Source of the DNA: Macrostomum lignano
Taxonomy: Eukaryota
Assembly: GCA_002269645.1 (NCBI GenBank)
Contig: NIVC01000568.1
Span: 434,001-498,000 of the forward strand
DNA: 64,000 nucleotides
Reading direction: 5' to 3'
The stretch's first letter is position 1. Each line of letters starts with the position of its first letter. The notes below the pieces were generated by a model. That model was not told the DNA's origin and searched no databases. It saw nothing but the letters and a program-made list of their open reading frames with translations. Below are positions 19,332 through 59,869 of this stretch, in pieces. The position numbers and the translations under genes are program-made.

Positions 19332-20668
19332 ATGGCATCCTATCTGTGCTCATCTGCTCCCGTGCTGCTGCTGATTATATTCATAGGCAGCACTGCGGCT
19401 GCTTCAACTGGGCGGAAGATTTCCTGGCGCCAAGCCAAAGGCCGGGTCAATTGCACAACTGATCGTGAGTCTTACTGTATAGCTAGGTGCTCTATCGAAA
19501 TGCTATATACTAAAATAGAAAATTTTTTAATTGGGTCCTTTAAAGAACCTGGACAAAGCAGAAGCACAGAATTTCATGAAACCAAAAGCTTCCACTATAA
19601 AAATATCGCCTGTTAACTTCGGTGAAATTATGACATAAACGTTTCCATCTATTCTATTAGAGATGAGTGAATATGAATTTATTCAGTATTCATACATATT
19701 CACTCAACATTCCACAACGTAAAAGTCAAGACACCTAAAACACAAGCTATATTTAAAATCACTACATGCAGCTAACTATAAAAGGGACGCCAACTAAAGC
19801 GCCGGAACCGAAGTAAAGCTCTGGACTGAACCAAGCCGACCCAAATCTATTACTTCTCTGACCAGTCAACTAAAAACACTGAGAAACTACACCCCATCCG
19901 GGTGCTCTCTTTGTGCTTCCAAGTATTTACTCAGGAAGCTACTTAAGTTCTAAGTATAGACTCGTTCACACCGCCATCAAAATAAAGTCAATTTTAGCGC
20001 GATCACACGGATAATTCACACTTTTCGACGCTTTGTAGCTCGGGCATCACTGATTTAGTGATTTGTTCGATGTTGTGAATTAGTTTCACCAAACAATAAC
20101 CTTGTCCAACCAAGCATATTGACTCATTGGAACTCTACTCATTGACAGAATGAACTCAGTAAAAACAAAATCATTATCTTATCGCCTCAAAAATTCAGCC
20201 AAGTATCTGTGCGGCCGAGTCAAATCGGTGCACGACGGCGACTCGTTGCGCATCATCCCGGAGACGAACGACGACGGCGACAGGGCGTCGGTTCGTGTCC
20301 GCCTGATGCAGATCGACGCGCCGGAGTTGAGCCAAGCTCACGGACGAGATTCTCGCAAAGCACTGGCCAGCAGGCTGCCGCGCGGTACCCGAGTCTGCGT
20401 GATCTCACCTGGTCGGGATTCCTATCATCGAATACTTGGATTTGTCTGTCTAGCTAAAGACGACATCGCCTACCGGATGCTGGCCGAAGGACACGCCTGG
20501 TGCTACCACAACACCTGCAACTTGCGGTACAAAGCAGCCACCAGCGCTGCCAGGGTCGCAGGGCTCGGTCTGTGGACGCCCGGACAGACGCCAATGGCTC
20601 CGTGGGCTTATCGTCGGTTTCAGCGGAGACGCGCCAGAAAGCACCGACAGCAAGGAAAGAAAGAATGA
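19332..20668 (+). CDS. Secreted single-domain staphylococcal nuclease (thermonuclease/SNase family), 200 aa; exons 19332-19464 and 20199-20668
   Basis: Exon 1 encodes a signal peptide (MASYLCSSAPVLLLIIFIGSTAAA) and ends at a C|GTGAGT donor. The TTCAG|CC acceptor restores frame (phase 1; 133+470=603 nt). SNase motifs VHDGDSL, VRLMQIDAPE, RDSYHRILG, MLAEGHAW, ARVAGLGLW and PWAYRR. Confidence 0.88.
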
Positions 20669-32451: not shown

Positions 32452-32493
32452 ATGGCGCAGCCTATTCCCATAAAATTTCAGGAGCATTTTCAA
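32452..32493 (+). CDS. CLTC: Clathrin heavy chain exon 1 ([14 protein letters not shown]), too short for the ORF track
   Basis: ATG...CAA|GTAAGT. The 14 codons match the known CHC N-terminus MAQILPIRFQEHLQ. Confidence 0.93.
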
Positions 32494-38400: not shown

Positions 38401-41400
38401 ACAATGTTATCGGTTAGTTTGAATCTGTTTTTAAACTGTTTAGCTCTTTAGGCATTCGAGTGGTTGGCGGTAATTTTATAATAAAACAGTTTTTTGCGAC
38501 GGTCACCTTAAGCTCAAAGAGTCGGGCTGAGGGGGTTTGCGGCAGTTTCAATGAAGATGTTTGATTTGCGGCAGTTTCAATGAAGATGTTTGATTTGCGG
38601 CGGTCACTTCAAAGAGTCGGGCTAGGGGGGGGTTGGCGGCAGTTTTATCGAGACTGATCTGTCGGCGGTCACTTCAAAGAGTCGGGCTAAGGGAGTTGGC
38701 GGCAGTTTCAATGAAGATGCTTGATCTGTTTGCGGTCACTTTAAAGAGTTCGGACTGAGGGGGGGGGGGTTGCGGCGGTTTCAATAAAGATGTTTGATCC
38801 GTTGGTTGTGACTTCAAATTAATCTAGCTAATTAACCTAACACCTGGCACTCTCACTTTAGGCTACGTGACCAACAATCTGCAAAATCCCGATTTGGCCC
38901 TGAAGCTGGCTTCGCGCAACAACCTTCAAGGCGCGGACGATCTGTTCCTGCGCAAATTCAACGCCCTGTTCCAGCAGGGCAACTACTCCGAAGCGGCCAA
39001 AGTGGCCGCCAGCGCGCCAAAGGGTATCCTGCGTACGCCGCAAACTATTCAGCGATTTCAGCAGGTGCCAGTGCAGCCTGGCACTACTTCGCCAATGCTG
39101 CAGTACTTCACCATCCTGTTAGACCAGGGCCAGCTGAACAAATACGAGAGCCTGGAGCTGTGCCGACCAGTGCTGCAGCAGGGTCGCAAACAGGTTGTTG
39201 AGAAATGGTTGAAAGAGGACAAGCTGGAATGCTCTGAGGAGCTTGGCGACCTGGTGAAACAGACTGATCCAACACTGGCTCTGAGCGTCTACCTGAGAGC
39301 CAATGTGCCCCACAAGGTCATTCAGTGCTTTGCCGAGACTGGGCAGTTCCAGAAGATTGTGCTCTACGCCAAGAAGGTGAGACTAACAGTTGGTCTTGAG
39401 GCTTATGGCCAATTTAGGGTCTGTTAATAGGTCAGGCTCGGTCTTAAGGTCATGATTTGGGCCCTTGTTGGTTGCTTCTCACATGTAGGTTATAAATGGG
39501 CCTAATGAGTCATGCGCTGGGTCAAGTATCAAATCTTAAAATGAGTCTGCCACTGGGTCAAAAATCGAGCTCTAAAGTGGGTCATGCGCTGGGTCAAGTA
39601 TCAAGTCTTAAAATGAGTCTGCCACTGGGTTAAGGATCGAGCTGTAAAGTAGGTCGGGCACTGGGTCATGGATCAAGTCGAAAAATGGGTCGGGCACTGC
39701 AAGGATCGAGCTTTAAAGTGGGTCAGGCACTGGGTCAAGGATCGAGCTCTAAAGTGGGTCGGGCACTGGGTCATGGATCAAGTCGTAAAATGGGTCGGGC
39801 ACAGGATCAAAGATCCGATTTAAAATGGGTCAGCCACTGGGTTAAGGATCGAGCTCTAAAGTGGGTCGGGCACTGGGTCAAGGATCGAGCTCTAAAGTGG
39901 GTCGGGCACTGGGTCATGGATCAAGTCGTAAAATGGGTCGGGCACAGGATCAAAGATCCGATTTAAAATGGGTCAGCCACTGGGTTAAGGATCAAGCTCT
40001 AAAGTGGGTCGGGCACTGGGTCAAGGATCGAGCTCTAAAGTGGGTTAGCCATTGGGTCAAGGATCGAGCTCTAAAGTGGGTCAGCCATTGGGTCAAGGAT
40101 CGAGCTCTAAAGTGGGTCAGCCATTGGGTCAAGGATCGAGCTCTAAAGTGGGTCGGGCACTGGGTCATGGATCAAGTCGTAAAATGGGTCGGGCACAGGA
40201 TCAAAGATCCGATTTAAAATGGGTCAGCCACTGGGTTAAGGATCAAGCTCTAAAGTGGGTCGGGCACTGGGTCAAGGATCGAGCTCTAAAGTGGGTTAGC
40301 CATTGGGTCAAGGATCGAGCTCTAAAGTGGGTCAGCCATTGGGTCAAGGATCGAGCTCTAAAGTGGGTCAGCCATTGGGTCAAGGATCGAGCTCTAAAGT
40401 GGGTTAGCCATTGGGTCAAGGATCGAGCTCTAAAGTGGGTCAATCAAGGATCGAGCTCTAAAGTGGGTCAGCCATTGGGTCAAGGATCGAGCTCTAAAGT
40501 GGGTCGGGCACTGGATCAAGGATCGAGCTCTAAAGTGGGTCGGGGTCAAGGATCGAGCTCTAAAGTGGGTCATGGGTCAAGGATCGAGCTCTAAAGTGGG
40601 TTAGCCAAAGGATCGAGCTCGTGGGTCGGGCAGGATCAAGGATCGAGCTCTAAAGTGGGTCAGATTTCAAATCGATGTGGGTTAGCCATTGGGTCAAGGA
40701 TCGAGCTCTAAAGTGGGTCGGGCACTGGATCAAGGATCGAGCTCTAAAGTGGGTCAGCCATTGGGTCAAGGATCGAGCTCTAAAGTGGGTCAGCCATTGG
40801 GTCAAGGATCGAGCTCTAAAGTGGGTCAGCCATTGGGTCAAGGATCGAGCTCTAAAGTGGGTCAGCCATTGGGTCAAGGATCGAGCTCTAAAGTGGGTCG
40901 GGCACTGGATCAAGGATCGAGCTCTAAAGTAGGTCGAGCACTGGGTCAAGGATCAAGTCCTAATTGGGCAAGGCTCAAAGATCTGATTCGAGTCCTCAAT
41001 GAACCGGGTACTGTGGTGTCAGGAAACAGCCTTAGCCGGCTCAAGAGTAAAGCTCTGGATGGGTCACGCAGTGTGACAAGATTCGACATTAGCTGGTTTA
41101 AGAATCCAACTCTGAAAAGAACCGAGGAAAAAGAATGGAGCCTTTGATTTTAAGTTAATGAATTTTGAACGGCAGCTTTGGCCTTCGATTAGCAACATTA
41201 TTTTCCCCATTCCCCCCTTCTTAACAGGTCGGCTATTCGCCCGACTACATCTTCCTGCTGCGCAACCTGATGCGCATCAACCACGAGCAGGGCCTGCAGT
41301 TCGCCCAGATGCTGGTCCAAGACGACGAACCGCTGGCCGATATCAGCCTCATTGTTGACGTCTTCATGGAGCAGAATCTAGTGCAACAGTGCACCAGCTT

Positions 41401-44400
41401 CTTGCTAGACGCTCTGAAGAACAATCGGCCTAGCGAGGGTCACCTGCAGACTCGCCTGCTAGAGATGAACCTCATGTCCGCGCCTCAGGTGGCCGACGCC
41501 ATCCTTGGCAACCAGATGTTCTCGCACTACGACAAGGCTCACGTTGCCAGCCTGTGCGAGAAGGCTGGCCTGTTGCAGCGGGCGCTGGAGCACTACACGG
41601 ACCTGTACGACATCAAGCGGGCCGTGGTGCACACCCACATGCTCAACCCGGAGTGGCTGGTCAACTACTTTGGCAATCTGAGCGTTGACGACTCGCTTGA
41701 ATGCTTGAAAGCTATGCTGCAGGCTAATATTAGACAGAATCTGCAGGTAAATATGTCATCGTGTTCGCTGTGGTGCTACTGACCAGTCAGTAGTATGATC
41801 TCTTCTCCCTCCCGACCTATAGGCTCATTTATCTGCTTATCGTTCGCGCCATTCCAAGCAAACTCTGCGGCCCTGTCGCTTCTCTGTCCCCATTTTATTG
41901 CCCCACCTTATCGCTCGCCCCTTGGCTGGGGAGAGGTTTTTGTCGCCATGTACATTATCTGCCACGCTGACTGATGTACACTGTGCCTGCACTGATATCA
42001 CGTGACTCTTCTAAAATCGATTTTGCAAATTTAGTTTGCCCTAGGCAAAAAATAGTTACCACTTTCTGTGCTTGCTACTGAATGGAAAGTAGTTAAAACG
42101 ATAACTAAAAATAGACTAATCCCTCATCCTCCCACTATTACCCAGGTGTGCGTACAAATCGCCTCGAAATACCACGAGCAGCTTGGCGCCGCCGCCCTAA
42201 TCGAGATATTCGAACAATTCAAAAGTTACGAGGGCCTGTTCTACTTCCTTGGCAGTATTGTGAACTTTAGCCAGGACCCGGAGGTGCACTTCAAGTACAT
42301 CCAGGCCGCCTGCAAGACCTCCCAGTTCAAAGAGGTCGAACGCATCGTTCGCGAGTCCAGCGTCTACGAGGCCGAGCGGGTAAAGAACTTTCTGAAGGAG
42401 GCCAAGCTGACCGACCAGCTGCCGCTCATCATCGTGTGCGACCGGTTCGACTTTGTGCACGACCTGGTGCTCTACCTGTACCGCAACAGTCTGCAAAAGT
42501 ACATTGAGATCTACGTGCAAAAGGTGGGCTATCGAATGGTTCTAAGAATCGCTCTTTAGCTGTAAATTAACTTCCGAAGTCATTCATTTCTTTTTGAGAG
42601 TCGCTCTCCATCTCCTCTTGAGAATCGCCCTCCATCTCCCCTTGAGAATCGCCCTTCATCTCCCCTTGAGAATCGCCCTCCATCTCCCCTTGAGAATCGC
42701 CCTTCATCTCCCCTTGAGAATCGCCCTTCATCTCCCCTTGAGAATCGCCCTTCATCTCCCCTTGAGAATCGTCTTCAATCTCCCCTTGAGAATCGCCCTT
42801 CATCTCCCCTTGAGAATCGCCCTCCATCTCACCTTGAGAATCGCCCTTCATCTCCCCTTGAGAATCGCCCTTCATCTCCCCTTGAGAATCGCCCTTCATC
42901 TCCCCTTGAGAATCGCCCTCCATCTCCCCTTGAGAATCGCCCTTCATCTCCCCTTGAGAATCGCCCTCCATCTCCCCTTGAGAATCGCCCTCCATCTCCC
43001 CTTGAGAATCGCCCTTCATCTCCCCTTGAGAATCGCCCTTCATCTCCCCTTGAGAATCGCCCTTTATCTCCCCTTGAGAATCGCCCTTTATCTCCCCTTG
43101 AGAATCGTCTTCAATCTCCCCTGGAGAATCGCCCCCATCTTCCTTTAGAATATCCTCTATATTTTCCTTGAGAATCATCCTCTATCTCACCTTAAGAATC
43201 GTCCTCTATTTCACCTTGAGAATAATCTCCATAATTCTCACAATACCTGTCGCAGGTGAACCCAAGCCGTCTTCCGGTAGTAGTGGGCGGCCTACTGGAC
43301 GTCGACTGCGCCGAAGACGTGATCAAGCAGCTCATCCTGGTTGTTCGCGGCCAATTCTCAACGGACGAACTCGTTGCCGAAGTGGAGAAGCGCAACCGAT
43401 TGAAACTGCTGCTACCCTGGCTGGAGCACCGGGTGCATGAGGGCTCGGAGGAGCCGGCCACGCACAATGCCCTGGCCAAGATCTACATCGACGCTAATAA
43501 CAATCCGGAGCGGTTCCTCAGGGAGAACCGGTTCTACGATTCCCGGGTGATTGGCAAGTACACTGAGAAGCGCGACCCTCACCTGTCCTGTATCGCCTAC
43601 GAGCGGGGCCAGTGCGACGACGACCTCATCCGAGTGTGCAACGAGAATTCTCTGTTCAAATCGCAGGCCAGGTATCTGGTTAAGCGCAAGGATGAGGCTC
43701 TGTGGGCCCGCGTGCTGCAGAGGACAACGTCTATCGGAGGCAGCTGATTGATCAGGTCTGTACAGCTGTTAATGAATCGCTAATCTAATTCACACATTTA
43801 AAAAGCTAGTTTTTATTTAGGCTGAATTAATTAGCATTCGAGGTTCAGTAATGTGAAAGTAAAGGTAATTATTTCGCAAGGGGTTTTAATTATTACGTAG
43901 GATAAACAGCCAAGGCTAATTGCTGTGTTAGCGAGGCTAGTTATAAATGATAAACAGCTATGGCTAATTGCTGTGTTAGCGAGGCTAATTATAAATGATA
44001 AACAGCCAAGGCTAATTGCTGTGTTAGCGAGGCTAGTTATAAATGATAAACAGCTATGGCTAATTGCTGTGTTAGCGAGGCTAATTATAAATGATAAACA
44101 GCCAAGGCTAATTGCTGTGTTAGCGAGGCTAGTTATAAATGATAAACAGCTATGGCTAATTGCTGTGTTAGCGAGGCTAATTATAATGATAAACAGCTAT
44201 GGCTAATTGCTGTGTTAGCGAGGCTAATTATAAATGATAAACAGCCAAGGCTAATTGCTGTGTTAGCGAGGCTAATTATAATCAGTCTGGATAATTAATA
44301 TGTTAAAATTCCTATCCCAGGTGGTGCAAACCGCTCTCTCCGAGACAAACGATCCTGAGGAGATCTCCGTTAGCGTAAAATCCTTCATGGCTGCCGACCT

Positions 44401-47174
44401 GCCCAACGAGCTTATCGAGTTGTTGGAAAAAATTGTGCTGGACAATACGGTGTTCTCGGATCATCGCAATCTGCAGAACCTACTGATCCTCACCGCCATC
44501 AAAGCCGACCGCAATCGGGTCATGGAGTACATCACTAAGCTGGAGAACTTCGACGCACCTGAGATTGCCCAGATTGCCATCAGCAATCAGCTGTTTGAGG
44601 AGGCTTTCGCCGTATTCAAGAAATTTGAAGTTAACGAGAGCGCCATTAAGGTGCGTTATTGATTGGACGATTATATTTGGATAAACTCCTAAACGAATCC
44701 GCGTCCCCACAAGTGCTAATCGAGCGCATCCGCATAACAACTAAACCCCAAATCGAATACTCGTCCCCACAGGTGCTAATCGAGCACATCCGCATCCCAA
44801 CTAACCTCCCAATCAATTCCGCAGTCTCACAGGTGCTAATCGAGCACATCCGTTATATAGCAACTAAACCCCCAGTTAAGTTCGAATCTCACAGGTGCTA
44901 ATCGAGCACATCCGCATAGCAACCAAACCCGCCCCGATAAAATTCGCTTCTCACAGGTGCTAATCGAGCACATCCGCAACCTCGATCGAGCCTACGAATT
45001 TGCCGAGAAGTGCAACGAGCCGGCAGTGTGGTCCCAGCTAGCCAGCGCTCAACTCGAAGAAGGCTTCGTCAAAGAGGCCATTGACAGCTTCATCAAGGCC
45101 AACGATCCCAGTTGCTATGTGGACGTTGTTCGAGTTGCCGGCGAGACCGGGCACTGGGAAGACCTAGTAAAGTTCCTGCTCATGGCTCGCAAAAAGGCCA
45201 AGGAGTCCTTCATCGAGACCGAGCTGGTGTTTGCCTACGCCAAAACCGGTCGCCTAGCGGACATGGAAGAGTACATCAACTCGCCTAATCACGCAAAAAT
45301 TGCCGAAGTTGCCGATAGGTGCTTCGACCAGGAGATGTACGAGGCCGCCAAGATTCTTTATAGCAACGTGTCTAATTACGCTAGGCTGGCCATCACCCAG
45401 GTTAAACTGGGCGAGTTCCAGAGCGCCGTCGAGTCCGCTAGGAAGGCTAATTCTACAAAAACTTGGAAAGAGGCGAGTCATTGTCTACACGATGAAAATT
45501 GTTTTACATAATTCAATAGCCAGCAGCTTTTTTACTTGCTAGAAAACTCCATTTTAGCTGTAAGATCCCAAACAAAGCTGAAAGATCCCACACTAAGTTA
45601 AAAGATCCCAAGCTAAGCTAAAAGATCCCAAGATAAGCAAAAAGGTCCCAATAAGCTGAAAGATCCCAAACAAAGCTGAAAGATCCCAAATTAAGCTGAA
45701 AGATCCCACACTAAGTTAAAAGATCCCAAACTCAGCTAAAATATCCCAAGATAAGCAAAAAGATCCCAAGATAAGCTAAAAGATCCCAAACAAAGCTGAA
45801 AGATCCCACACTAAGTTAAAAGATCCCAAACTATGCTGAAAGATCCCAAGCTCAGCTAAAATATCCCAAACTCAGCTAAAAGATCCCAAGATAAGCAAAA
45901 AGATCCCAAGATAAGCTAAAAGATCCCAAACAAAGCTGAACGATCCCACACTAAGTTAAAAGATCCCAAACTATGCTGAAAGATCCCAAGCTCAGCTAAA
46001 ATATCCCAAACTCAGCTAAAAGATCCCAAGATAAGCAAAAAGATCCCAAGATAAGCTAAAAGATCCCAAACTATGCTGAAAGATCCCAAGCTAAGCTAAA
46101 AGATCCCAAACGAAGCTGAAAGATCCCAAGATAAGCAAAAAGATCCCAAGATAAGCTAAAAGATCCCAAACTAAGCTGAAAGATCCCAAGCTCAGCTGAA
46201 AGATCCCAAACTAAGTTAAAAGATCCCAAGCTATGCTGAAAGATCCCAAGCTCAGCTGAAAGATCCCAAGCTCAGCTGAAAGATCCCAATAAGCTAAAAA
46301 GATCCCAAACTAAGTTAAAAGATCCCAAGCTATGCTGAAAGATCCCAAGCTCAGCTGAAAGATCTCAATAAGCTGAAAGATCCCAAACTAAGCTGAAAGA
46401 TCCCAAACTAAGCTGAAAGATCCCAATAAGCTGAAATATCCCAAATTAAGCTGAACGATTCCAAACTGTATCTCATATATCCCAGTTAATCACAATATCA
46501 ACCACAACTTTTTACCATCCTATAAACTCCCCCCCCACCTCGTCATCATTATCCAGGTGTGCTTCTCTTGCCTAGAGAGCCAGGAATATCGCCTAGCCCA
46601 GATCTGCGGCCTGAACATCATCATACACGCTGACGAGCTCGAGGAGCTGATCAACTTCTACCAGACCAGGGGCCTGTTCAACGAGCTCATCTCCCTGTTC
46701 GAGGCCGGCCTCGGGCTCGACCGCGCCCACATGGGATTGTTCACCGAGCTGGCCATTCTGTACAGCAAGTACCGGCCAGCCAAGCTCAAGGAGCACCTGG
46801 AGCTGTTCTGGTCCCGCATCAACATTCCCAAGGTGCTGCGCGCCGCCGAGCAGGCCCACCTGTGGTCCGAACTCGTGTTTCTATACGAGAAATATGAAGA
46901 ATTCGACAATGCCATACTCACTATGATGAAGCATCCCACCGAGGCCTGGCGAGAGTCCTTCTTTAAGGAGATGATCTCCAAGTGCGCTAATATCGAAATC
47001 TATTACAAGGCTATAAAGTTCTATCTGGACTTTAAGCCTCTGCTGCTCAATGACCTGCTGCAGGTGAGTCCGCCTGTAATGAATTTCATGTCTGTGTCTG
47101 GTTGTCTGTCTGTCTGTCTGTCTGTCTCTGTCTGTCTGTCTGTCTGTCTGTCTGTGCCTGTCTGTCTGTCTGTC

Positions 47175-47233
<59 letters not shown>

Positions 47234-47282
47234 GCCTGTCTGTCTGTCTGCCTGTCTGTCTGCCTGTCTGTCTGTCTGTCTA

Positions 47283-47368
<86 letters not shown>

Positions 47369-50300
47369 CTAGTGTCTGTCTGTCCTCCTAGTGTCTGTCT
47401 GTCTGTCCTAGTGTCTGTCTGCCTGTCTGTCTGTCTGTCGCTGTGTCTGTCTCTTTCTGTGTGTGTCTGTGTCTATCAGTCAGTCAGTCAGTGGGTCCTC
47501 AGTGAGGACTAAGCGTGTGCCGCATGCCCAACCCAACCATCCCAGGTGCTGATCCCACGCCTGGACCACACCCGCACGGTGAGCTTCTTCTCTAAGGAGG
47601 GCAAGATCGCCATGGTGAAGCCCTACCTCAAAGCGGTGCAGCAGAACAACAACAAGCACATCAACGAAGCCCTGAACAGTCTGTACATCGACGAGGAAGA
47701 CTACCAGAGCCTTCGCGCCAGCATCGAGGCATTCAACAATTTCGACAACATCGGCCTAGCGCAGAAGTGCGAAAAGCACGAGCTGCTGGAATTCAGGCGC
47801 ATTGCCGCTTTCCTGTACAAGGGCAACAACCGGTTCAGCCAGAGCATCGAGCTGTGCAAGCGGGACCGGCTGTACAAGGATGCCATGCAGTTCGCTGCCG
47901 ACTCTCGCGACTCCGAACTTGCCGCCGCCCTGCTGCAGTGGTTCCTCGATGAGAAGCTCACCGAGTGCTTCTGCGCCTGTCTGTACCAGTGCTACGATTT
48001 ACTCAAGCCGGACAAGGTGATGGAGCTGGCCTGGCGGTACAACCTCATGGACTATACGATGCCCTATCTGGTGCAGGTCATGGCTGAGTACCAGGCTCGG
48101 CTGGAGCGGCTCGAGCAGGCCGAGGCTGTGCGAGCTGAGAGCGACGAGAAAGCCGACAGCGGTAGCAACCCGATTGTGATGCCGAGTAAGTGCGGAATTC
48201 CCTTGTAGGTTACATTCCCCTGTAGGTTACATTCCCCTGTAGGTTACATTCCCCTGTAGGTTACATTCCCCTGTTAGGTTACATTCCCCTGTTAGGTTAC
48301 ATTCCCCTGTAGGTTACATTCCCCTGTAGGTTACATTCCCCTGTTAGGTTACATTCCCCTGTAGGTTTCATTCCCCTGTAGGTTACATTCCCCTGTTAGG
48401 TTACATTCCCCTGTAGGTTACATTCCCCTGTTAGGTTACATTCCCCTGTAGGTTACATTCCCCTGTAGGTTACATTCCCCTGTAGGTTACATTCCCCTGT
48501 TAGGTTACATTCCCCTGTTAGGTTACATTCCCCTGTAGGTTACATTCCTCTGTAGGTTACATTCCCCCGTAGGTTACATTCCCCTGTAGGTTACATTTTC
48601 CTGTAGGTTACATTACCCTGTAGGTTACATTACCCTATAGGTTACATTCCCTGTAGGTTACATTCCCCTGTATGTTATATTCCCCTGTACATTAAATTCC
48701 CCTGTATGTTACATTCCCCTGTAGATTAAATTCCCCTGTAGGTTACATTCCCCTGTAGGTTACATTCCCCTGTAGGTTACATTCCCCTGTATGTTACATT
48801 CCCCTGTAGATTAAATTCCCCTGTATGTTACATTCCCCTGTAGATTAAATTCCCCTGTATGTTACATTCCCCTGTAGGTTACATTCCCCTGTAGGTTACA
48901 TTCCGCTGTAGATTAAATTCCCCTGTAGATTAAATTCCCCTGTATGTTACATTCCCCTGTAGATTAAATTCCCCTGTAGGTTACATTCCCCTGTAGATTA
49001 AATTCCCCTGTAGGTTAGATTCCCCTGTAGGTTACATTCCCCTGTAGGTTACATTCCCCTGTAGATTAAATTCCCCTGTAGATTAAATTCCCCTTTAGGT
49101 TACATTCCCCTGTAGATTAAATTCCCCTGTAGGTTACAGGAGTGTCCAGTCAGCGTTCTCATCTTTAGACTCCATAGATGTTTATAATCCCCATTCTCGA
49201 AAACTTTGGATTATGTCAAAACATCGATTTTATTAAACGAATCGTTACTTATAGCACTTTTGATCGTTTATTTTAATTCAAACGATATTCGTTTACAAAT
49301 TCAATGACATTAATCGTTTATCCTTGTCTGATAATCCAAGACTTGAACCAGCCGGCACTGTGCTGGGGTGCCGGTCCCCAGTTTCATCAAGGATTATCTC
49401 CTCAGATGCCTTCCTCTATGTTTAGCGGCAGCAATTCGAGTAAATAATCCAACACTGCGCCTGTGCCGGTTTTTAGTTAATTTTTATACGTTTCTATAAG
49501 GGTTTTTTTCTGGTTGGGTTCTGCTCCGTTCACAGCTTTTTTATTTATTGTAATTTTTTGTATACTACTCTTCATTCATTAGCAGCAGCAAGATTGGAGG
49601 AAAACTTGTAAAACCAAAATCCAGCAGTACGTGTTACATAGCGAGCACGAGAGAAAAGAGGTGGCGTGGCGCCTTAGGTCCCAGACAGGCCCTGACTTTG
49701 ACCTCTCTTCTTACTACTCTCTCATCGGCTGAGCCAGATTGGGCCTGCCCTCCCCTAGGCTGAGTTTCGTCCATCTAACTATGACTTCTCTCCTTATTGC
49801 TCTCTTATTGGCTGAGCCAGATTGGGCCTGCCCCCCCCCCCAGGCTGAGTTTCGTCCATCTAACTATGACTTCTCTCCTTATTGCTCTCTTATTGGCTGA
49901 GCCAGATTGGGCCTGCCCCCCCAGGCTGAGTTTCGTCCATCTAACTATGACTTCTCTCCTTATTACTCTCTTATTGGCTGAGCCAGATTGGGCCTGCCCC
50001 CCCCCAGGCTGAGTTTCGTCCATCTAACTATGACTTCTCTCCTTATTACTCTCTTATTGGCTGAGCCAGATTGGGCCTGCCCCCCCCCAGGCTGAGTTTC
50101 GTCCATCTAACTATGACTTCTCTCCTTACTGCTCTCTTATTGGCTGAACTTGATTGAGTCCGTATCCCTAAGACTGAGATTTGTCCAGTTCTTGCTTTCA
50201 CTTCTGTACCTCTAGTTTAAACACACTGCGCGGACAAACCACTAAAAATGGAGACGCTCTACTTTTTAACAATTTTATTTGCGAGTTGACACATCTACGA

Positions 50301-50903
50301 ATAGTTATTCGAGCCAGTGAGTTGAGCAATTTTAAGATTGTATCAAGATAGAGTCACGTGTCACATTTCGTTATTAGTGCGGGTAGCGACAGGCAGAGAT
50401 AAATGAGCCAATAGGAAGTCGGGAGGAAGTAGAGATCATACTACTGAGTTAAAAGTAGCATAAAAGTGGACTTTTATGCTTTTTTACGGTAAAGAACTGA
50501 AACTTACTGAAACTTTTTGCTTGCCCTAAATAGAATAGCGCATCCTACACTCTTATTTCAGTCCTGACGGGACTTTCTGCTAAATCTTCAATACGATAGA
50601 AAATTTCCAAATTATTCCAGCATCTGCTATTCAATTAACTTATTTTTTATAAAGTGCCATCAGTCTTTTTGCTTCGCGGTTTTCTTTTTTCAGTGTCGGT
50701 TTTTTGTTCTATGGTTGACTATTATGACTTGATTTATTAATTAATGTATGCCAATTCCATCCCCAACAGGCAATCCCATGCTGATGCTCACCAACACTCC
50801 GCACTCGATGATGCCGCCTGGAGTGGCCGGCATGCCGCCTTACCAGCCTCCGCCGCCGCCTCATCAGGGCGGCTATTACCCGGGCATGCCGCAGCAGTTC
50901 TGA
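32452..50903 (+). CDS. CLTC: Clathrin heavy chain, 11 exons, ~1681 aa after correcting two 1-bp deletions
   Basis: Exons 32452-32493, 37450-38412, 38862-39376, 41228-41746, 42146-42523, 43256-43755, 44321-44650, 44957-45472, 46557-47063, 47546-48185, 50770-50903. Recognisable clathrin sequence runs from [14 protein letters not shown] through the terminal domain and CHC repeats to the PIVMP...LMLT tail. All junction phases are compatible. Confidence 0.97.
35820..36090. repeat. GA-rich low-complexity tract in clathrin intron 1
   Basis: Purine-only AAGAG/GAGA sequence. Confidence 0.8.
37450..38412 (+). CDS. CLTC: Clathrin heavy chain exon 2 (beta-propeller terminal domain)
   Basis: LQNIGIN...[15 protein letters not shown]...[13 protein letters not shown]...DEDNVI. 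One 1-bp deletion at ~37550. Confidence 0.95.
38485..38815. repeat. Degenerate ~59-bp tandem repeat in clathrin intron 2
   Basis: Recurring GCGGTCACTTCAAAGAGTCGGGCT...GCGGCAGTTTCAATGAAGATGTTTGAT. Confidence 0.8.
38862..39376 (+). CDS. CLTC: Clathrin heavy chain exon 3
   Basis: [16 protein letters not shown]...KIVLYAKK|GT. Confidence 0.95.
39500..40975. repeat. 36-bp minisatellite in clathrin intron 3
   Basis: (GGGTCAAGGATCGAGCTCTAAAGTGGGTCAGCCATT)n with higher-order variants. Confidence 0.93.
41228..41746 (+). CDS. CLTC: Clathrin heavy chain exon 4
   Basis: [18 protein letters not shown]...NIRQNLQ|GT. Confidence 0.95.
42146..42523 (+). CDS. CLTC: Clathrin heavy chain exon 5
   Basis: [14 protein letters not shown]...YIEIYVQK|GT. 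Confidence 0.95.
42590..43225. repeat. 24-bp minisatellite in clathrin intron 5
   Basis: (CCCCTTGAGAATCGCCCTTCATCT)n, ~26 copies. Confidence 0.95.
43256..43755 (+). CDS. CLTC: Clathrin heavy chain exon 6
   Basis: [18 protein letters not shown]...YRRQLIDQ|GT. One 1-bp deletion at ~43718. Confidence 0.93.
43905..44282. repeat. 48-bp minisatellite in clathrin intron 6
   Basis: (GGCTAATTGCTGTGTTAGCGAGGCTAGTTATAAATGATAAACAGCTAT)n, ~8 copies in two alternating variants. Confidence 0.93.
44321..44650 (+). CDS. CLTC: Clathrin heavy chain exon 7
   Basis: [16 protein letters not shown]...NESAIK|GT. Confidence 0.95.
44695..44980 (+). repeat. Five tandem 60-62-bp copies of the clathrin intron 7/exon 8 junction
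   Basis: CACAG|GTGCTAATCGAGCACATCCG at 44773, 44833, 44895 and the true site 44957. The copy at 44713 has CACAA in place of CACAG. Confidence 0.92.
44957..45472 (+). CDS. CLTC: Clathrin heavy chain exon 8 (ends at a GC donor)
   Basis: [17 protein letters not shown]...ANSTKTWKE|GCGAGT. Confidence 0.93.
45555..46460. repeat. ~20-bp minisatellite in clathrin intron 8
   Basis: (AAGCTGAAAGATCCCAAACT)n-like, ~45 copies. Confidence 0.93.
46557..47063 (+). CDS. CLTC: Clathrin heavy chain exon 9
   Basis: [19 protein letters not shown]...[10 protein letters not shown]|GT. Confidence 0.95.
47090..47460. repeat. (CTGT)n microsatellite in clathrin intron 9
   Basis: Tetranucleotide run. Confidence 0.95.
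47546..48185 (+). CDS. CLTC: Clathrin heavy chain exon 10 (proximal leg to trimerisation helix)
   Basis: [15 protein letters not shown]...SNPIVMP A|GTAAGT (phase 1). Confidence 0.95.
48200..49138. repeat. 17-18-bp minisatellite in clathrin intron 10
   Basis: (GTTACATTCCCCTGTAG)n, roughly 50-55 copies. Confidence 0.95.
49341..49439 (+). CDS. CLTC: Probable alternative (cassette) exon of the clathrin C-terminal tail, 33 codons
   Basis: CCAAG|AC acceptor and A|GTAAAT donor; 99 nt, phase 1-1, stop-free: [33 protein letters not shown]. Confidence 0.65.
49727..50150. repeat. ~80-bp tandem repeat (~5 copies) in clathrin intron 10
   Basis: GGCTGAGCCAGATTGGGCCTGCCCCCCC-AGGCTGAGTTTCGTCCATCTAACTATGACTTCTCTCCTTATT unit with a variable C-run. 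Confidence 0.9.
50770..50903 (+). CDS. CLTC: Clathrin heavy chain terminal exon
   Basis: AACAG|GC then [44 protein letters not shown], a Pro/Gly/Tyr-rich tail with the LMLT motif. Confidence 0.9.
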
Positions 50904-51849
50904 TAATAGAGGCTCCTCGAAAACAATAATGGAATTCTCTCAACTGACTACTTAGCATGCTTAGTAGTGTGATAGTAATAATGACTGGACAAGTAGACTC
51001 TGAAAATGGCATCCCTTAATCTCTATTTCCTGTCGTGCACAATCTTGTCTTTAAGTTCGCCTAAAAACTGTTGCTTAAATTTGATTACAAACAGCTATTC
51101 GAAAAATCTAAAATTGCTTCGAAAGTCAATGAAAATCCTAATAAAAAGTCATTTTGAAAATATATGAAATATTATAAGAACTTGTTGGACACCGCGCCAC
51201 TACATTTCCCTAAACTTATACTGTTTACTCAAAAACTACCATTTTATTCCATTGTTTCAATTTTTGCTTGTCTTTTCTCTCTGCCTGTAGTTACGATTCT
51301 GTTGTTGGTTACAGCTTAATACCGCACATATAATATCTTAATGATATACAAATATGGAAATTTCTGATAAGAACAGACAGTTGGTTAATCTTTTTGACCG
51401 GCATTATTTGCCGCGTACTACTTACTGAAATGTGTGGAACTAATAAATCCTGTTTATTTTATTGTTAGCAGTGCAATTGTCGTGGCCCTAAGAACAGCCT
51501 GTCTTCTTGTTACAACCAGAAATTTTTATTAATTAAGGTATTTAATAATTGTTTGCACTTTGGATTCAAGCGCTTTATTCCTTAAACTGTTATTCACTAA
51601 TTTAGCACTGAGAATCGTTGAACCGCAGCAGAGTACAGCTGGAGTTTATGCGCAACTTATTGTTCTATCTTTATATTATTTTACTAATATTTATGAAACT
51701 GTTTACGGACGCACTATAAATCTCACCCTCGGTTATTGCCTGTCAATTTCTCTTAACTATATTTTGTTTGTTATATTTCTTGTTTCTTGTTGTCAATTCT
51801 ACGTTAAATTTGTGTGTTTTGTGCCATTTTCCCTCGTCAAAGTCGTAAC

Positions 51850-55655: not shown

Positions 55656-58600
55656 TAGAGGTCGGACGAGCAAAAATTTTTGGGTCGGGCGTGAGTAGTC
55701 GTGAATAATTTCAGCTTTGCCGTGATCGTGATCGTGATCGTGATTGGTTCGTGAAAAATTAAAAGTAAAAAATTTCCGTTCAAATTTTGTTTTTTTTTCT
55801 TCAAATTTGAATTTTTCTATCAGTTAATGTGTTTGATTCTATTTTTAAGTGCTTCTATACCATCAGCTTATACCATCTGCATCTGCCCATCTGGCTTTCT
55901 TCTCTGGTTGAGAAGGAACTCAGAGTCTGGCTGAGAAGTAAGAAGTTCTTACTTCTTAGACATTTGTGTTGCTTTTTGGCTTTCTCAAAGCTCAAACTAA
56001 GCTGAAAGCTGTAACTATTTAGTATTTTTATTTTTAAATTTTTAATTTAAAAGTAGTATTTGCTACTATTACTATTTTAGAATTTAGTATTAAATAAATA
56101 GTTAAAACAAAAATTTCATTTCATTTTGATCATGAATTTGCATATTTGAGTTTTTCTTTCTTCTTATTATTTTTATGCTATAATAATGTATAAATAGATT
56201 AGATACTATACAGATAGATAGTTGATACTAGAGCATAATTTTATAATCTGATTGTCTAATAGTTATTTAGTAATTATAATTTATAACTAATAATTTTTAA
56301 TATATAAGCATAGTATTTTTTTACTAAAATAAATTGCTGTAAATTAAAAATTAAGGTTGACTAAGTCTAAGTACTAAGTAGCAAATATACTTGATGGATA
56401 TGCTAAATTAAATTGTTATTTGCTATTGTTATTGTCATTTGTTAATAGTAATAATAATAGTCAAACACAAATATTAAATACTTTTTCTTCTTGAATTGAA
56501 TTGAATAATGAATAATATTCAATATTCAATATAGTATTAACTATTATGTACTAGTACTATCATGTGGTACACTGGTATATTGAATATGTATGCCTGATTG
56601 CCTGATGCATAGTAGTATATTTCTAATCTATATGGTTAGTCTAAAAATATTTTTTTCTAGCCTATTTGACTTTAAAGTCTGTAGTGACTTTACATTTACA
56701 CTATACTGCTATACTATGCAATATTTTATTTAAAATATAAATAAATATTTTAATTTAAAATAATATAATACTTGTTTTTTCTTTGCTTTTCTACCTAGCA
56801 AATTAAAATAGGCAATTACACAATATTACATTACAATTTACAATTTACAAATCAAACAATTTCAGCCATTCATTTGCAATGGCCTCTGTTGATAAGCCAA
56901 CCCAGCAACCTCGAGGAAGAGGCAGTGCTGTGTGGTTGTACTTTAAAGACGTTGAAGGAAAAGAGAATTCTGCTGCTTGCCTAGCTTGTAAGAAGGAGGT
57001 TCTACGAAACACAGGATCAACAGGCAGCATGCGAAGACACATAGAATCCTGCCATCCAATTCAATTCAAAGAGCTCCTAAACACTGAGGCAGATCGTGCA
57101 AAGCCAAAATGTAAAGATGGACCACAACCATTGAAGCAGCAGAAGTTGAGCACAATGTTTGCTCAAGCAAATGCTCAAGAATGGTCGGATTCGCACCCTC
57201 GTTCGGTTGCAATTGATCGAAAAATTCTCCGCTTTATTGTGTTGGATTCACAGCCATTCTCTGTGGTAGAAGGTGAAGGCTTTCGCGATCTGTTGAAAGA
57301 AGCATGTCCGCAATATCGATTGAAGAGCACTCGATTTTATCATGACAAGCTAGAGACTCTCTATGAAGAAATTAAATTGCAGGTCCAGGACGAAATAGAC
57401 AGACTGCGAGATTTCGGTTTCACGTGTGACTTGTGGAGTGACGGCCAGTTGGCACTCATGTCCTTCACAATCCATTCTATCACGCCAGATTTTGAGCGTA
57501 AGCAGCTTTTACTGTGCGTAAAGCCATTCACTGATGCCCATACTGGGCTTAACATCTCGGCCGTTTTTTCGACAACCCTTGGTGAGTGGGGCATTGGCTT
57601 AGAGCAAGTCAGCCTCCTCCTGCGTGATGGGGCCAGCAACATGAAGCTTGCAGGAGAACTTCTGAAAGTACCATCTGCCCATTGTGCTGCCCACAAGCTG
57701 AACCTTGTTGTTAAGGATTCCATCTCCGGTCATCGAGGACTGAAGACAATACTTGACAAAGCACGGAGCATTGTTGGCCACTTCCACCACTCTGTAACCG
57801 CTCAAGCAAACCTCAAAACACTGCAGCTCCAGCTGAAGCTACCAACACACAGCCTCGTGCAAGATGTAGACACACGCTGGAATTCAACACTAGCCATGTT
57901 ACGCCGAATCAACGAGCAAGAGGAAGCGTTTAGTGTCTATCGCACCAGACACCGACCAATTGAAATCCTGACGGACAATGAGTCAGATGTTTCAAAGAAA
58001 GCTGTCAAACTTCTTGAGATTTTTGAGGTTTTTACGCTAGAAGTCAGCAGGGAAACTGCCAGCATCTCGTGTATCTTGCCGATGGTGAAAGTGTCGCTGG
58101 AGCATCTGCAGCAGGTAGACTGCTTTGGCATCACGTACCTTCGAGACGACCTGGTGAAAGGGTTGACTCAACGCTTCTCTGACGAAAAAAAGAGTCACCA
58201 CCACATTGTTGCTACGATGTTAGACCCACGCTTCCGGCTAGATTTTTTCGATGAAGAGCAGCGCAACTTTGCTAAGGCTGAGCTCGTAAAAGCAATGAAT
58301 GAAATTTTGCGTGAAACTTCTCTTCCTACTGTTGATGGCGATACAGCCATAGACGAGGACCTCTCCGATGTATCTATCGAAACTGAGCCGTGAGTATTTC
58401 CTCTATTTCATAATTCAATGTACATGTACATGTAACAAAAAAATTAAATTATAAATTACATTTGCTACATCTGTAAGTTATAAATTTTATAACTAATATA
58501 TCAAAGTTCTCTTTGTTTTAACTTTTAACTTTTAATTTCACCTTTTTAGACAAACTGAGTCTCAGCCTCAGCAGCTATCTATGTCAGCCCTGTTCGAGAA

Positions 58601-59869
58601 GTCTTCTACTTCTAGTGCTGCAGCTGCAACTCTGCGTGACCTGTCTAGGGCCGGAACGCTACTGCCAGTTTCAAACAGAGGCAATGCTATGGACAAGTTG
58701 GCTCGTGAAATGGCAGCCTACCTATCAGAGCCTCGACTTCCATTTGAGGAAGACCCAATGAAGTTCTGGAGAGACAAGACTCCATCAACTGCAATGTCAG
58801 CACTTGTTCGGAAATTTCTGGGACCACCACCTACCAGTGTTCCAAGTGAGCGTATCTTCAGCAACGTTGGAAACATCTACGAGCCGAAACGACGTCGCCT
58901 GCTTGGCGAAACCGTTGAAAAGCTTGTTTTTATTAACTATAATGTTCGGAAGTTTGACCCATAGAGAAATGAGCAGGGTCCATTCAATTCATTGCTGTTA
59001 TTGCTGATTAGTGATTAGTTTTACTTTTTTGAAGATTGAGATCAGAGAGACAAGATAATGATAGAGAAAATAAATAATCAAAGACTATAGAACAAGTAGA
59101 GTTGGAGCTACAAGAAAAAGTTTATCGATAAGGAATAGATAACTGTTGCTATAGTGTGTAGCTGTGTACTCTGTAGTCTGTAGACTCTGTAGTATGATTT
59201 TTTGCATGTAGCTAGTATAGTATAGATTAGACTTAAATTAGTCATTGTAATAACACTATATGTGTAGAACGTAAAAGTAAAGTAGTAAACCTACATGTAC
59301 TCTTTTATACTTCATATTCATACACTGATAAGCTTTTCTGTTTTTCACTTTTCACTGTTTTTAGTTCTGTAGGCAGCTAAGCAAGTTAACAAACACTTGT
59401 CTGTACATGTCATGTACTATCATGTAGTGAAATTTATATACAGTCATACATATATACAATTTATATTTTCATTCAGTGCTTTTCAGTTTTAATTTTACAT
59501 TTTACAAAATAAACAAAAGATTGAAAAGAATAAGGCAGTAAGCTTTGAACTTCGAAAATCCACTTTAACTTCGAACTTTCTGAACTAAGTAAAGTAAACT
59601 GAAAACTCTATTCTGTAAGTTTTGTGTTAAAACACATTCGTTGTATTTGAAAAGAAAAACAAAAACCAAGTAAGTCTACATTTAGGACTGTACACGATTG
59701 TGGTTTGGGGAACTGAAAAGTATAAACATAGTAACATCTGAAGCTGAAAGAAACCCACAATCACGATCACGCACGTGAAAAATGTTTCACGACTCGTGAA
59801 TTCACGACACTGAAAAAGGTCGTGAATTCACGATATCGTGATCACGATCGTGATCACGTCCTACCCCTA
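55656..59869 (+). mobile_element. Full-length hAT DNA transposon (4214 bp)
   Basis: 8-bp TSD CAATTTGC at 55648-55655 and 59870-59877, TIRs TAGAGGTCGGACG / CGTCCTACCCCTA (11 of 13 match), and subterminal CGTGAT/ATCACG arrays at both ends. Confidence 0.95.
56879..58964 (+). CDS. hAT transposase, 641 aa; exons 56879-58389 and 58550-58964
   Basis: BED finger (SAVWLYF...CLACKK...MRRHIESCH), catalytic FTCDLWS and LLRDGASNM, CAAHKLNL, DTRWNST, PTSVPSERIFS and the C-terminal dimerisation region. The phase-2 GT-AG intron 58390-58549 restores one frame (1926 nt). Confidence 0.93.

What the first reader, a model, noticed from the sequence alone, without database searches (positions are those of the whole stretch)
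49341..49447. Hidden 99-nt symmetric exon in the clathrin tail, next to the Hsc70 uncoating motif
Seen: inside intron 10 a stop-free 99-nt segment is bounded by AG and GTAAAT in phase 1-1. It would insert [33 protein letters not shown] between the trimerisation region (PIVMP) and the LMLT-containing last exon. If its donor is ignored, it ends at TAA 49445-49447 and gives an alternative C-terminus lacking LMLT. Its [10 protein letters not shown] resembles the vertebrate tail QPQLMLTAGP, which suggests an exon duplication. Established: QLMLT is the Hsc70 site for auxilin-dependent uncoating, and vertebrate CLTC is alternatively spliced near its C-terminal trimerisation region. Inference: isoforms may differ in uncoating kinetics or lattice type.
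Basis: partly seen in the sequence, partly recalled or inferred. Interest (0 to 1): 0.7.

Follow-up and report, generated by a model that had tools for sequence, protein, structure and literature searches.

The report
Weak cryptic exon in flatworm clathrin intron
The 99-base open segment is really there, in the last intron of a Macrostomum lignano clathrin heavy-chain gene, and its donor is used in one public RNA-guided gene model, but it looks like a chance, weakly spliced cryptic exon rather than a conserved in-frame isoform.

Summary
The sequence facts are correct. The segment 49341-49439 is 99 nt, stop-free, bounded by AG and GTAAAT, and in phase 1-1 between exon 10 (end 48185) and the last exon (start 50770) of a Macrostomum lignano clathrin heavy-chain gene.

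It is no more than chance gives:
- Intron 10 holds three such frame-preserving open AG..GT segments, and shuffled introns nearly always hold at least one.
- Both splice sites score below all 35 real sites of the three paralogous genes.
- Codon usage is intron-like.
- The closest paralogue has a roughly 200-nt (GACA)n intron here, with no counterpart.
- No clathrin protein in the collections searched contains the peptide.

GenBank protein PAA52987.1 (89 aa, 'hypothetical') is exactly join(49304..49439, 50770..50903). It was annotated from RNA-seq on a contig that breaks inside this intron. So the junction 49439^50770 is probably used. That model, however, starts 37 nt upstream of the proposed acceptor, so it is not the in-frame cassette.

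Best reading: a low-level cryptic donor or unproductive variant. The 33-residue insertion, the exon duplication and the altered-uncoating idea remain unsupported. Interest is low.

The parts
47546..48185 (+). Clathrin heavy chain coding exon 10. It ends ...SNPIVMP plus the first base of a split codon.
   Evidence: The junction enumeration reproduces GenBank and UniProt M. lignano proteins P0241 and P0123 exactly.
48186..50769 (+). Intron 10 (2584 nt, phase 1). The donor is GTAAGT and the acceptor is ccccaacAG.
   Evidence: Annotated proteins use 48185^50770.
48197..49138 (.). 17-nt minisatellite (ATTCCCCTGTAGGTTAC, about 55 copies) filling the 5' third of the intron.
   Evidence: GenBank contig NIVC01003153.1 breaks inside it.
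49304..49439 (+). Intron-derived first coding segment of GenBank model PAA52987.1 (BOX15_Mlig023955g1, 89 aa). It runs from ATG 49304 to the cryptic donor.
   Evidence: P0373 equals the translation of join(49304..49439, 50770..50903).
49341..49439 (+).
   Evidence: The acceptor tccaAG|ACT scores -2.2 bits, below all 35 real acceptors. The codon log-likelihood is -0.50 per codon, below every window of real CDS.
49440..49445 (+). GTAAAT cryptic 5' splice site, with CGA on the exon side.
   Evidence: It scores 0.5 bits, below all 35 real donors. It is nevertheless the donor used in GenBank model PAA52987.1.
49445..49447 (+). TAA that ends the frame if the donor is not used.
49331..49343 (.). Left copy of a 13-nt direct repeat, ATAATCCAAGACT. 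The right copy, ATAATCCAACACT, lies at 49444-49456. The pair brackets the GC-richer segment.
   Evidence: Such short two-copy repeats are about as frequent as chance gives here.
49352..49469 (+). Inverted repeat CCGGCAC (49352-49358) with GTGCCGG (49368-49374 and 49463-49469). The predicted long-range closing stem is followed by TTTTT.
   Evidence: (z = -2.75). There is no Rfam match.
49695..50147 (.). 83-nt tandem repeat, 5.5 copies.
49734..49853 (+). Second chance frame-preserving open AG..GT segment in the same intron (120 nt).
50179..50316 (+). Third chance frame-preserving open AG..GT segment (138 nt). Its donor CCA|GTGAGT scores 8.7 bits, far above the candidate's.
50770..50903 (+). Last coding exon: (S)[43 protein letters not shown] plus TGA. 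It carries the LMLT Hsc70 motif.

Best explanation
The window is Macrostomum lignano, and the gene is one of three paralogous clathrin heavy-chain genes. The 99-nt segment is ordinary, lineage-specific intron sequence that happens to be open in frame.

Its GTAAAT at 49440 acts as a weak cryptic 5' splice site. This site is occasionally joined to the normal last-exon acceptor at 50770. The RNA upstream of it is either retained intron, the product of one of several weak upstream acceptors, or a start inside the intron. All of these put a stop codon in the clathrin frame, so the products are unproductive by-products and not a clathrin with 33 extra residues.

The by-product became visible as an 89-residue 'hypothetical protein' only on an assembly contig that breaks inside the intron. 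There the dominant 48185^50770 junction cannot be mapped.

Shown: the sequence facts, the lack of conservation, the weak splice sites, the intron-like codon usage, and the exact identity of the GenBank model to join(49304..49439, 50770..50903).

Inferred: that real reads support that junction, that its level is low, and that it has no function.
For: Identity of the locus:
- A full-length search gives M. lignano proteins. P0123 and P0241 have tails identical to the canonical splice.
- GenBank contig NIVC01000569.1 is the same locus.

Chance level:
- There are three frame-preserving open AG..GT segments of at least 99 nt in intron 10 and 299 in the gene's introns. Shuffled introns give at least one in 93-100% of trials.

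Splice sites, scored with a PWM built from 35 real introns of the three paralogues:
- All 35 real acceptors are YAG, and 34 are CAG.
- The candidate acceptor scores -2.2 bits (real minimum -0.7, median 11.2). 21% of intronic AGs score as well.
- The donor scores 0.5 bits (real minimum 2.4, median 9.6). 25% of intronic GTs score as well.
- Nearby acceptors at 49178, 49352 and 49406 score higher, and all lead to in-frame stops.

Coding signal:
- The log-likelihood is -0.50 per codon. Real 33-codon windows have mean 0.65 and minimum -0.23. Intronic open windows have mean -0.88, and 16% are at least as high as the candidate.
- GC3 is 0.58, against 0.74-0.89 in real coding sequence.
- Another frame scores higher than the proposed one.

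Conservation:
- Paralogue cluster 2 is 94.5% identical in protein and 33% different at 4-fold sites. Its last intron is about 180-234 nt of (GACA)n in two copies.
- Cluster 3 has a 1.2-kb intron with no trace of the segment.
- Exons align between paralogues and introns do not.

Proteins:
- All 15 M. lignano clathrin heavy-chain entries have the canonical tail.
- No 5-mer of the peptide occurs in the 372 fetched proteins.

Transcript model:
- P0373 (PAA52987.1) is exactly join(49304..49439, 50770..50903). It lies on contig NIVC01003153.1, which starts in the minisatellite of this intron.
- The annotation was made from RNA-seq with STAR, StringTie and TACO, using --isoform-frac 0.75 (PMC5730564).
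- On the complete copy of the locus only the canonical isoform was kept.
A transcript that contains ATG 49304 therefore cannot be the in-frame cassette.
Against: - No read-level data could be examined, so the level at which the donor is used and the 5' end of the transcript are unknown.
- TACO's filter only says that the variant is below 75% of the major isoform on the complete copy.
- StringTie may have extended the first exon upstream through intronic pre-mRNA reads. In that case a true acceptor at 49341 would be hidden.
- The segment is frame-preserving. It shows a 6/10 match to the ancestral-type tail QPQLMLTAGP at the homologous place after PIVMP. I estimate the chance of such a match in this intron and frame at about 0.03, from the window-wide rate.
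- Its average similarity to the 20 best-matching clathrin tails exceeds 98% of shuffles.
- A PWM built from 35 sites is crude.
Confidence: 0.58

Rival explanations
1. One reading: a genuine in-frame cassette exon, 49341-49439. It is included in a minor or tissue-specific clathrin heavy-chain isoform and places 33 residues between the trimerisation region and LMLT. With the donor skipped, it gives a tail without LMLT.
For: - The segment is frame-preserving and open.
- The donor junction 49439^50770 is present in an RNA-guided GenBank model.
- The motif QP.L...AGP sits at the homologous position.
- Ranked similarity to clathrin tails is above 98% of shuffles.
- The spacing of QLMLT from the hub matters for uncoating (PMC2830701).
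Against: - The acceptor is the weakest AG in the neighbourhood and scores below all 35 real acceptors.
- The one transcript model extends upstream of that acceptor.
- No clathrin protein with the peptide appears in any search or cluster.
- There is no counterpart in the paralogues.
- Codon usage is intron-like.
- The open frame is expected by chance.
- No AATAAA follows the TAA, so an alternative 3' end is not evident.
Confidence: 0.1
2. An independent short transcript starts inside intron 10, from an intronic promoter or by spliced-leader trans-splicing at an upstream AG. It is spliced 49439^50770 and is either non-coding or encodes the annotated 89-residue protein: 46 intron-derived residues plus the 43-residue clathrin tail with LMLT.
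For: - The GenBank CDS starts at ATG 49304, inside the intron.
- The pipeline removed transcripts that overlap annotated repeats. The model's 5' end therefore probably lies in the unique stretch 49139-49304 (inference).
- M. lignano trans-splices 38.8% of its genes.
Against: - The contig lacks exon 10, so an apparent internal start is what a truncated assembly would produce anyway.
- The complete copy of the locus has no such separate gene model.
- The intron-derived part has no coding signature.
- There is no homologue anywhere among 1.84 billion representatives apart from the model itself.
Confidence: 0.12
3. Nothing is spliced here at all. The GenBank model is an artefact of multi-mapping reads and a broken contig, and the segment is inert intron.
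For: - STAR was run end-to-end in two-pass mode with up to 1000 multi-mappings.
- The last three exon bases before both donors are CGA. In the second pass, canonical junction reads with 3-nt overhangs could therefore be assigned to the cryptic junction and inflate its count.
- Both splice sites are at decoy level.
Against: - A junction enters STAR's second pass and StringTie only if at least one read spans it with an anchor of 10-12 nt or more. This rests on my knowledge of those programs' default settings.
- The 12 nt before the two donors share only 4 positions. Canonical reads also have perfect alignments on the complete copies, so mis-assignment is unlikely to create the junction from nothing.
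Confidence: 0.13
4. The GC-richer island (about 49344-49470) is a relic of something else. It could be a decayed ancestral or duplicated terminal exon, a small inserted element flanked by a 13-nt target duplication, or an intron-hosted structured RNA.
For: - GC is 0.54, against 0.32 and 0.41 in the flanks.
- A 13-nt direct repeat brackets the island.
- The predicted fold has a 9-bp closing stem followed by TTTTT, with z = -2.75.
- The island keeps AGP as in the planarian and vertebrate tails, whereas the used exon has NTP.
Against: - There is no similarity to the present last exon.
- There is no second copy in the window or in about 90 kb of paralogous loci.
- There is no Rfam family or tRNA.
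- Direct repeats of this size are at chance frequency in this stretch.
- The matched residues exclude the functional LMLT.
Confidence: 0.05

Closest known systems
Cryptic (pseudo-) exons and unproductive 'poison' splice variants in introns of highly expressed genes
   Same: It is intronic and has weak, non-consensus splice sites. It is not conserved in paralogues and has intron-like codon usage. It is seen only as a minor transcript model, and most ways of including it put a stop codon in the host frame.
   Different: The particular 99-nt reading from the AG at 49340 would keep the frame. Actual inclusion levels and the 5' boundary are unknown.
Vertebrate CLTC exon 31 (7 residues, developmentally regulated; PMC7480091)
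   Same: It is an alternative coding segment near the C-terminus of clathrin heavy chain that would change triskelion hub properties.
   Different: Exon 31 lies inside the helical tripod of the trimerisation domain, is 21 nt long, and is conserved and experimentally validated. The segment here lies after the tripod, just before LMLT. It is 99 nt long, unconserved, and lacks RNA proof of its acceptor.
GenBank PAA52987.1 / UniProt A0A267DWI6, 'hypothetical protein BOX15_Mlig023955g1' of M. lignano
   Same: It is identical: its 89 residues are the translation of window join(49304..49439, 50770..50903). This means 45 of its first 46 residues come from this intron segment, and the rest is the clathrin tail.
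   Different: It is annotated as a free-standing small protein on a contig that lacks the rest of the clathrin gene.
Predicted truncated clathrin isoform X2 of the hemichordate Glandiceps talaboti (P0165)
   Same: It is an annotated isoform whose alternative 3' end removes the whole tail, including the Hsc70 motif.
   Different: It branches earlier (after ...REYLTK). It is a computational prediction in another phylum, and its sequence is unrelated.

Membership tests
Clathrin heavy chain (host gene) | Full-length similarity to solved clathrin heavy chains: propeller, linker and CHCR repeats. | tested here: met
   phmmer against PDB gives E = 0 and about 85% identity over residues 15-685, continuing to residue 1259. 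The Pfam Clathrin families are found on the M. lignano homologues.
Clathrin heavy chain (host gene) | C-terminal Hsc70 motif (Q)LMLT after the trimerisation helix. | tested here: met
   NPMLMLT lies at the start of the last exon. The motif's role is taken from PMC2830701.
Functional alternatively spliced cassette exon | The upstream junction (48185^49341) is observed in RNA. | not testable with these tools
   No read data are available. No protein in any search contains PIVMP followed by NLNQP. The only model that includes the segment extends upstream of the acceptor.
Functional alternatively spliced cassette exon | The downstream junction (49439^50770) is observed in RNA. | tested here: met
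   The RNA-guided GenBank CDS PAA52987.1 uses exactly this junction (pipeline described). This is transcript-model evidence, not read counts.
Functional alternatively spliced cassette exon | Splice sites within the range of the gene's real sites. | tested here: not met
   The acceptor scores -2.2 bits and the donor 0.5 bits. Both are below all 35 real sites of the three paralogues, and about a fifth to a quarter of decoys score as well.
Functional alternatively spliced cassette exon | Conservation with coding-type constraint in relatives. | tested here: not met
   There is no counterpart in four paralogous loci of the same genome. The allelic or duplicate copies are identical and so uninformative. 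Other Macrostomum species were not available.
Functional alternatively spliced cassette exon | Coding composition (codon usage, GC3) like the host gene. | tested here: not met
   The log-likelihood is -0.50 per codon, against a real minimum of -0.23. GC3 is 0.58, against 0.74-0.89.
Tandem exon duplication of the terminal exon | Detectable nucleotide or protein similarity to the present last exon beyond chance. | tested here: not met
   The best local nucleotide alignment is within the shuffle range. Identity to the species' own NPMLMLT.. tails is 3/10 (my count by eye). Matches of 6/10 to the vertebrate motif occur three more times by chance in the window.
CLTC exon 31-type alternative exon | Located within the helical tripod of the trimerisation domain; short (21 nt); conserved. 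| tested here: not met
   The segment lies after PIVMP, downstream of the tripod. It is 99 nt long and unconserved (PMC7480091).
Cryptic or unproductive intronic exon | Inclusion introduces a premature stop in the host frame. | tested here: inconclusive
   Every acceptor other than 49341 (49140, 49178, 49352, 49406) and retention of the upstream intron give stops. Only the weakest acceptor keeps the frame. Which one is used is unknown.
Known RNA families (snoRNA, tRNA-derived and others) | Match to an Rfam covariance model or a tRNA fold. | tested here: not met
   There is no Rfam hit at E <= 1 in 48100-51000. ARAGORN finds nothing in the window.

The most novel reading that the evidence does not exclude
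The segment is a young, paralogue-specific alternative exon of one M. lignano clathrin heavy-chain gene and is really translated. In one version it is a 33-residue spacer that moves the LMLT Hsc70 site away from the triskelion hub. In the other, from an intronic start, it gives an 89-residue free 'tail-only' protein carrying LMLT, which could compete for Hsc70 during uncoating.
Probability: 0.08. Interest if true: 0.55.

Novelty: new member of a known kind. Interest (0 to 1): 0.2.

Why it matters
If the in-frame isoform were real, it would be a natural experiment on how the distance of the Hsc70-binding LMLT motif from the clathrin hub affects uncoating. It would sit in a transgenesis-capable flatworm that keeps three clathrin heavy-chain paralogues.

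As the evidence stands, the finding matters mainly as a caution:
- Frame-preserving open AG..GT segments are expected by chance in every kilobase-scale intron of this genome.
- A fragmentary contig turned a rare cryptic junction of a highly expressed gene into a stand-alone 'hypothetical protein' in the public databases.

Tried and rejected
**1. Short protein queries.** The 290-aa C-terminal query returned only fragments of 502 aa or less, at 70% identity or less. I wrongly took this to mean that no close relative existed. Judging from the listed hit lengths, the tool appears to return hits only up to about 1.75 times the query length. It also lists only the top 120 by bit score. The species was found only with the 1714-aa query. 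The 89-aa protein P0373 was missed by all three word-index searches and found only by the exhaustive search.

**2. Exact look-ups of ORF-style products of the window.** Eight ORFs were tried and none is in the collection. P0242 has no genomic record.

**3. Exon duplication.** Local alignment of 49200-49650 against 50650-51100, and of the segment against the last exon, stays within the shuffle range. Rejected.

**4. Repeated element.** blastn of 49139-49700 against the window and against the paralogous loci finds no second copy.

**5. Structured RNA.** There is no Rfam or tRNA hit. The fold z-score of -2.75 is noted but not pursued.

**6. Target-site duplication.** The 13-nt direct repeat is at about chance frequency for this stretch. 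It is not used as evidence.

**7. Pseudogene reading of the host gene.** Two 1-nt frame breaks suggested it. It was rejected because GenBank contig NIVC01000569.1 has the intact base at the second site. Proteins from other annotations read through both sites.

**8. Lophotrochozoan isoforms X1-X3 as precedent for a tail cassette.** Their differences lie in the N-terminal propeller, not the tail.
Full report
**Observation.**
The coordinates and reading are right.
- Exon 10 of a plus-strand clathrin heavy-chain gene ends at 48185 (…PIVMP plus one base, donor GTAAGT).
- The last exon starts at 50770 ((S)NPMLMLT…QQF, stop TGA at 50901-50903).
- The segment 49341-49439 is 99 nt, preceded by AG and followed by GTAAAT.
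- It keeps phase 1-1 and reads [33 protein letters not shown].
- Without the donor it ends SSK-TAA (49445-49447).

**What the locus is.**
- Alignment to solved clathrin structures and junction enumeration give eleven coding exons: 32452-32493, 37450-38412, 38862-39376, 41228-41746, 42146-42523, 43256-43755, 44321-44650, 44957-45472, 46557-47063, 47546-48185 and 50770-50903.
- A full-length protein search identifies the organism as the free-living flatworm Macrostomum lignano.
- UniProt A0A1I8JFX5 (P0123) and GenBank PAA80732.1 (P0241) have C-termini identical to the canonical splice.
- M. lignano has three clathrin heavy-chain clusters. The window gene is cluster 1. Cluster 2 is 94.5% identical in protein with 33% of 4-fold sites different. 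Cluster 3 is 86% identical.
- GenBank contig NIVC01000569.1 (L002) is the same locus as the window (98.8% identity). The two are identical over the unique intron stretch 49100-49720.

**Is it more than chance? No.**
- All three forward frames are open across much of the segment.
- With the phase of each intron respected, the gene's introns contain 299 stop-free AG..GT segments of at least 99 nt whose length is a multiple of three. Three of them are in intron 10: 49341-49439, 49734-49853 and 50179-50316. The last has a far better donor.
- Block-shuffled intron 10 yields at least one such segment in 100% of trials. Its 1.2 kb of non-repeat sequence does so in 93%.

**Splice sites.**
- From 35 real introns of the three paralogues, every acceptor is YAG (34 CAG, 1 TAG), usually after a C-rich tract.
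- The six donors that lack G at -1 all have GTRAG.
- The candidate acceptor tccaAG|A scores -2.2 bits. Real sites scored leave-one-out have a minimum of -0.7 and a median of 11.2.
- The donor CGA|GTAAAT scores 0.5 bits, against a real minimum of 2.4 and median of 9.6.
- 21% of intronic AGs and 25% of intronic GTs in this gene score as well.
- Neighbouring AGs at 49178, 49352, 49382 and 49406 all outscore 49341.

**Coding signal.**
- Codon log-likelihood was trained on the two paralogous coding sequences against intron trinucleotides. The proposed frame scores -0.50 per codon.
- This is lower than every 33-codon window of the real coding sequence (mean 0.65, minimum -0.23).
- It lies inside the distribution of open intronic windows (mean -0.88; 16% are at least as high).
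- Another frame scores higher. GC3 is 0.58, against 0.74-0.89.

**Conservation.**
- Between paralogues the exons align to within a few bases of their ends, and no intron aligns.
- In two copies of the closest paralogue, the last intron is about 180-234 nt and consists almost entirely of (GACA)n.
- In cluster 3 it is 1.2 kb of a donor-like minisatellite plus about 300 nt.
- Neither blastn nor tblastn finds any trace of the segment in these loci.
- The segment is therefore at most specific to this paralogue. Other Macrostomum species were not present in the collections.

**Proteins and transcripts.**
- None of the 15 M. lignano clathrin heavy-chain entries carries the insertion.
- No 5-mer of the peptide occurs in the 372 proteins fetched.
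- The exhaustive search with the 56-codon open frame did find one perfect match. P0373 is GenBank PAA52987.1, 'hypothetical protein BOX15_Mlig023955g1', 89 residues. It is exactly the translation of window join(49304..49439, 50770..50903).
- It lies at the very start of contig NIVC01003153.1. That contig begins inside the 17-nt minisatellite of intron 10 (window 48315) and so lacks exon 10.
- The GenBank annotation of this assembly was built from RNA-seq. The pipeline used STAR end-to-end in two-pass mode, StringTie, TACO with --isoform-frac 0.75 and TransDecoder (PMC5730564).

**What that model means.**
I infer that at least one real read spans it.
- On the complete copy of the locus the pipeline kept only the canonical isoform. 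This fits a minor variant that surfaced only where the dominant junction could not be mapped.
The only AG between 49277 and 49340 is that acceptor itself. A transcript that contains 49304 therefore cannot be the in-frame cassette.
- If such a transcript is joined to exon 10 through an upstream acceptor, or through intron retention, the clathrin frame hits a stop. For retention this is [12 protein letters not shown]. For acceptors at 49140 or 49178 the stop comes within about 25 codons.
- The alternatives are an intronic start or an artefact. Both are listed as rivals.

**Exon-duplication idea.**
- [10 protein letters not shown] matches the vertebrate and planarian QPQLMLTAGP at 6 of 10 positions. 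The matches exclude LMLT.
- The species' own three tails ([30 protein letters not shown]) match it at only 3 of 10.
- Three unrelated 10-mers in the six-frame translation of the window also reach 6 of 10.
- There is no nucleotide similarity to the present last exon.
- Against 232 clathrin tails, the best local score is not unusual (p = 0.24). The mean of the top 20 scores is mildly high (p = 0.017).
- I treat this as a weak hint, not as evidence.

**Other features.**
- The segment is a GC-richer island (0.54, against 0.32 and 0.41 in the flanks).
- It is bracketed by a 13-nt direct repeat.
- It is predicted to fold with a long-range stem, CCGGCAC with GTGCCGG, followed by TTTTT (z = -2.75).
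- There is no Rfam or tRNA match, and no second copy in about 150 kb examined.

**Comparison with known cases.**
QLMLT is the Hsc70 site, and its distance from the hub matters (PMC2830701). CLTC exon 31 is a validated 7-residue alternative exon (PMC7480091).
- This segment is not of the exon 31 type. It differs in position, size and conservation.
- Annotated isoform differences in molluscan clathrin heavy chains lie in the propeller, not the tail.

**Verdict.**
The most likely reading is a low-level cryptic donor or unproductive variant in a repeat-rich, fast-evolving intron (confidence 0.58). The in-frame cassette keeps about 0.1. Interest is 0.2.

Noticed in passing
window 37549-37555 and 43712-43722: Two single-base homopolymer contractions break the clathrin reading frame in highly conserved exons. 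GCC-CAA is read as gccaa, and CAG-GAG as cagag. GenBank contig NIVC01000569.1 has the intact base at the second site, and annotated proteins read through both. These are probably long-read assembly errors in the window's assembly, not a pseudogene.
   Followed up: partly
L005 975-2571 (GenBank NIVC01003153.1) = window 49304-50903: The public 'hypothetical protein' PAA52987.1 / A0A267DWI6 is not an independent gene. It is the tail of a clathrin heavy-chain gene plus 46 intron-derived residues, called on a contig that breaks inside the intron's minisatellite.
   Followed up: yes
L003 19441-20370 (paralogue cluster 3, last intron): The intron begins with about 25 tandem copies of a roughly 35-40-nt unit that repeats the exon end and donor (GCTATGCCAG|GTGAGTGTCTAATCC). 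This gives a long array of decoy 5' splice sites right after the real one. How the spliceosome picks the first is unclear.
   Followed up: no
window 48197-49138: Each 17-nt unit of the intron-10 minisatellite (ATTCCCCTGTAG|GTTAC) juxtaposes an acceptor-like CCCCTGTAG with GT.
   Followed up: partly
window 37450-38412 versus L001 13841-15851 and L003 6605-8879: The window gene's exon 2 corresponds to three exons in both other paralogues. This paralogue has lost two introns, or the others gained them. The paralogues have 11, 13 and 14 coding exons.
   Followed up: partly
window 45473-45478: Intron 8 of the window gene has a GC donor (GAG|GCGAGT), whereas the cluster-2 paralogue has GAG|GTGAGT at the same junction. 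It could be a true GC-AG intron or another assembly error.
   Followed up: no
window introns at about 39500-41150, 42560-43230, 43900-44280, 45550-46470 and 47095-47470: Nearly every intron of this gene is dominated by a different mini- or microsatellite array. These account for most of the spurious long open frames in the window. In the paralogues the corresponding introns carry unrelated arrays.
   Followed up: partly
window 515-2374 (-), 12760-16000 (-): Retroelement remains. One is a non-LTR-type ORF with reverse transcriptase and RNase H. The other is a fragmented LTR-type element with aspartyl protease, RT-RNase H and integrase pieces in different frames.
   Followed up: partly
window 9258-9713 (-), 20150-20668 (+), about 56850-58950 (+): Other genes are present: an exon encoding a fibrinogen C-terminal domain; an intron-less 172-residue staphylococcal-nuclease-like ORF; and, by correspondence with L005 8537-10634, a 645-residue zf-BED/hAT-dimerisation transposase-like gene.
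   Followed up: no
window 27545-30097 (-): An 850-residue ORF with about 20 tandem copies of a roughly 16-18-residue unit (…ERQDLIDFSAANKTAHE…). It has no Pfam match, and its function is unknown.
   Followed up: no
P0165 (Glandiceps talaboti clathrin heavy chain isoform X2): A predicted hemichordate isoform ends …REYLTKMNRSL and lacks the whole tail, including the Hsc70 motif. It may be worth checking whether tail-less clathrin isoforms are real anywhere.
   Followed up: no
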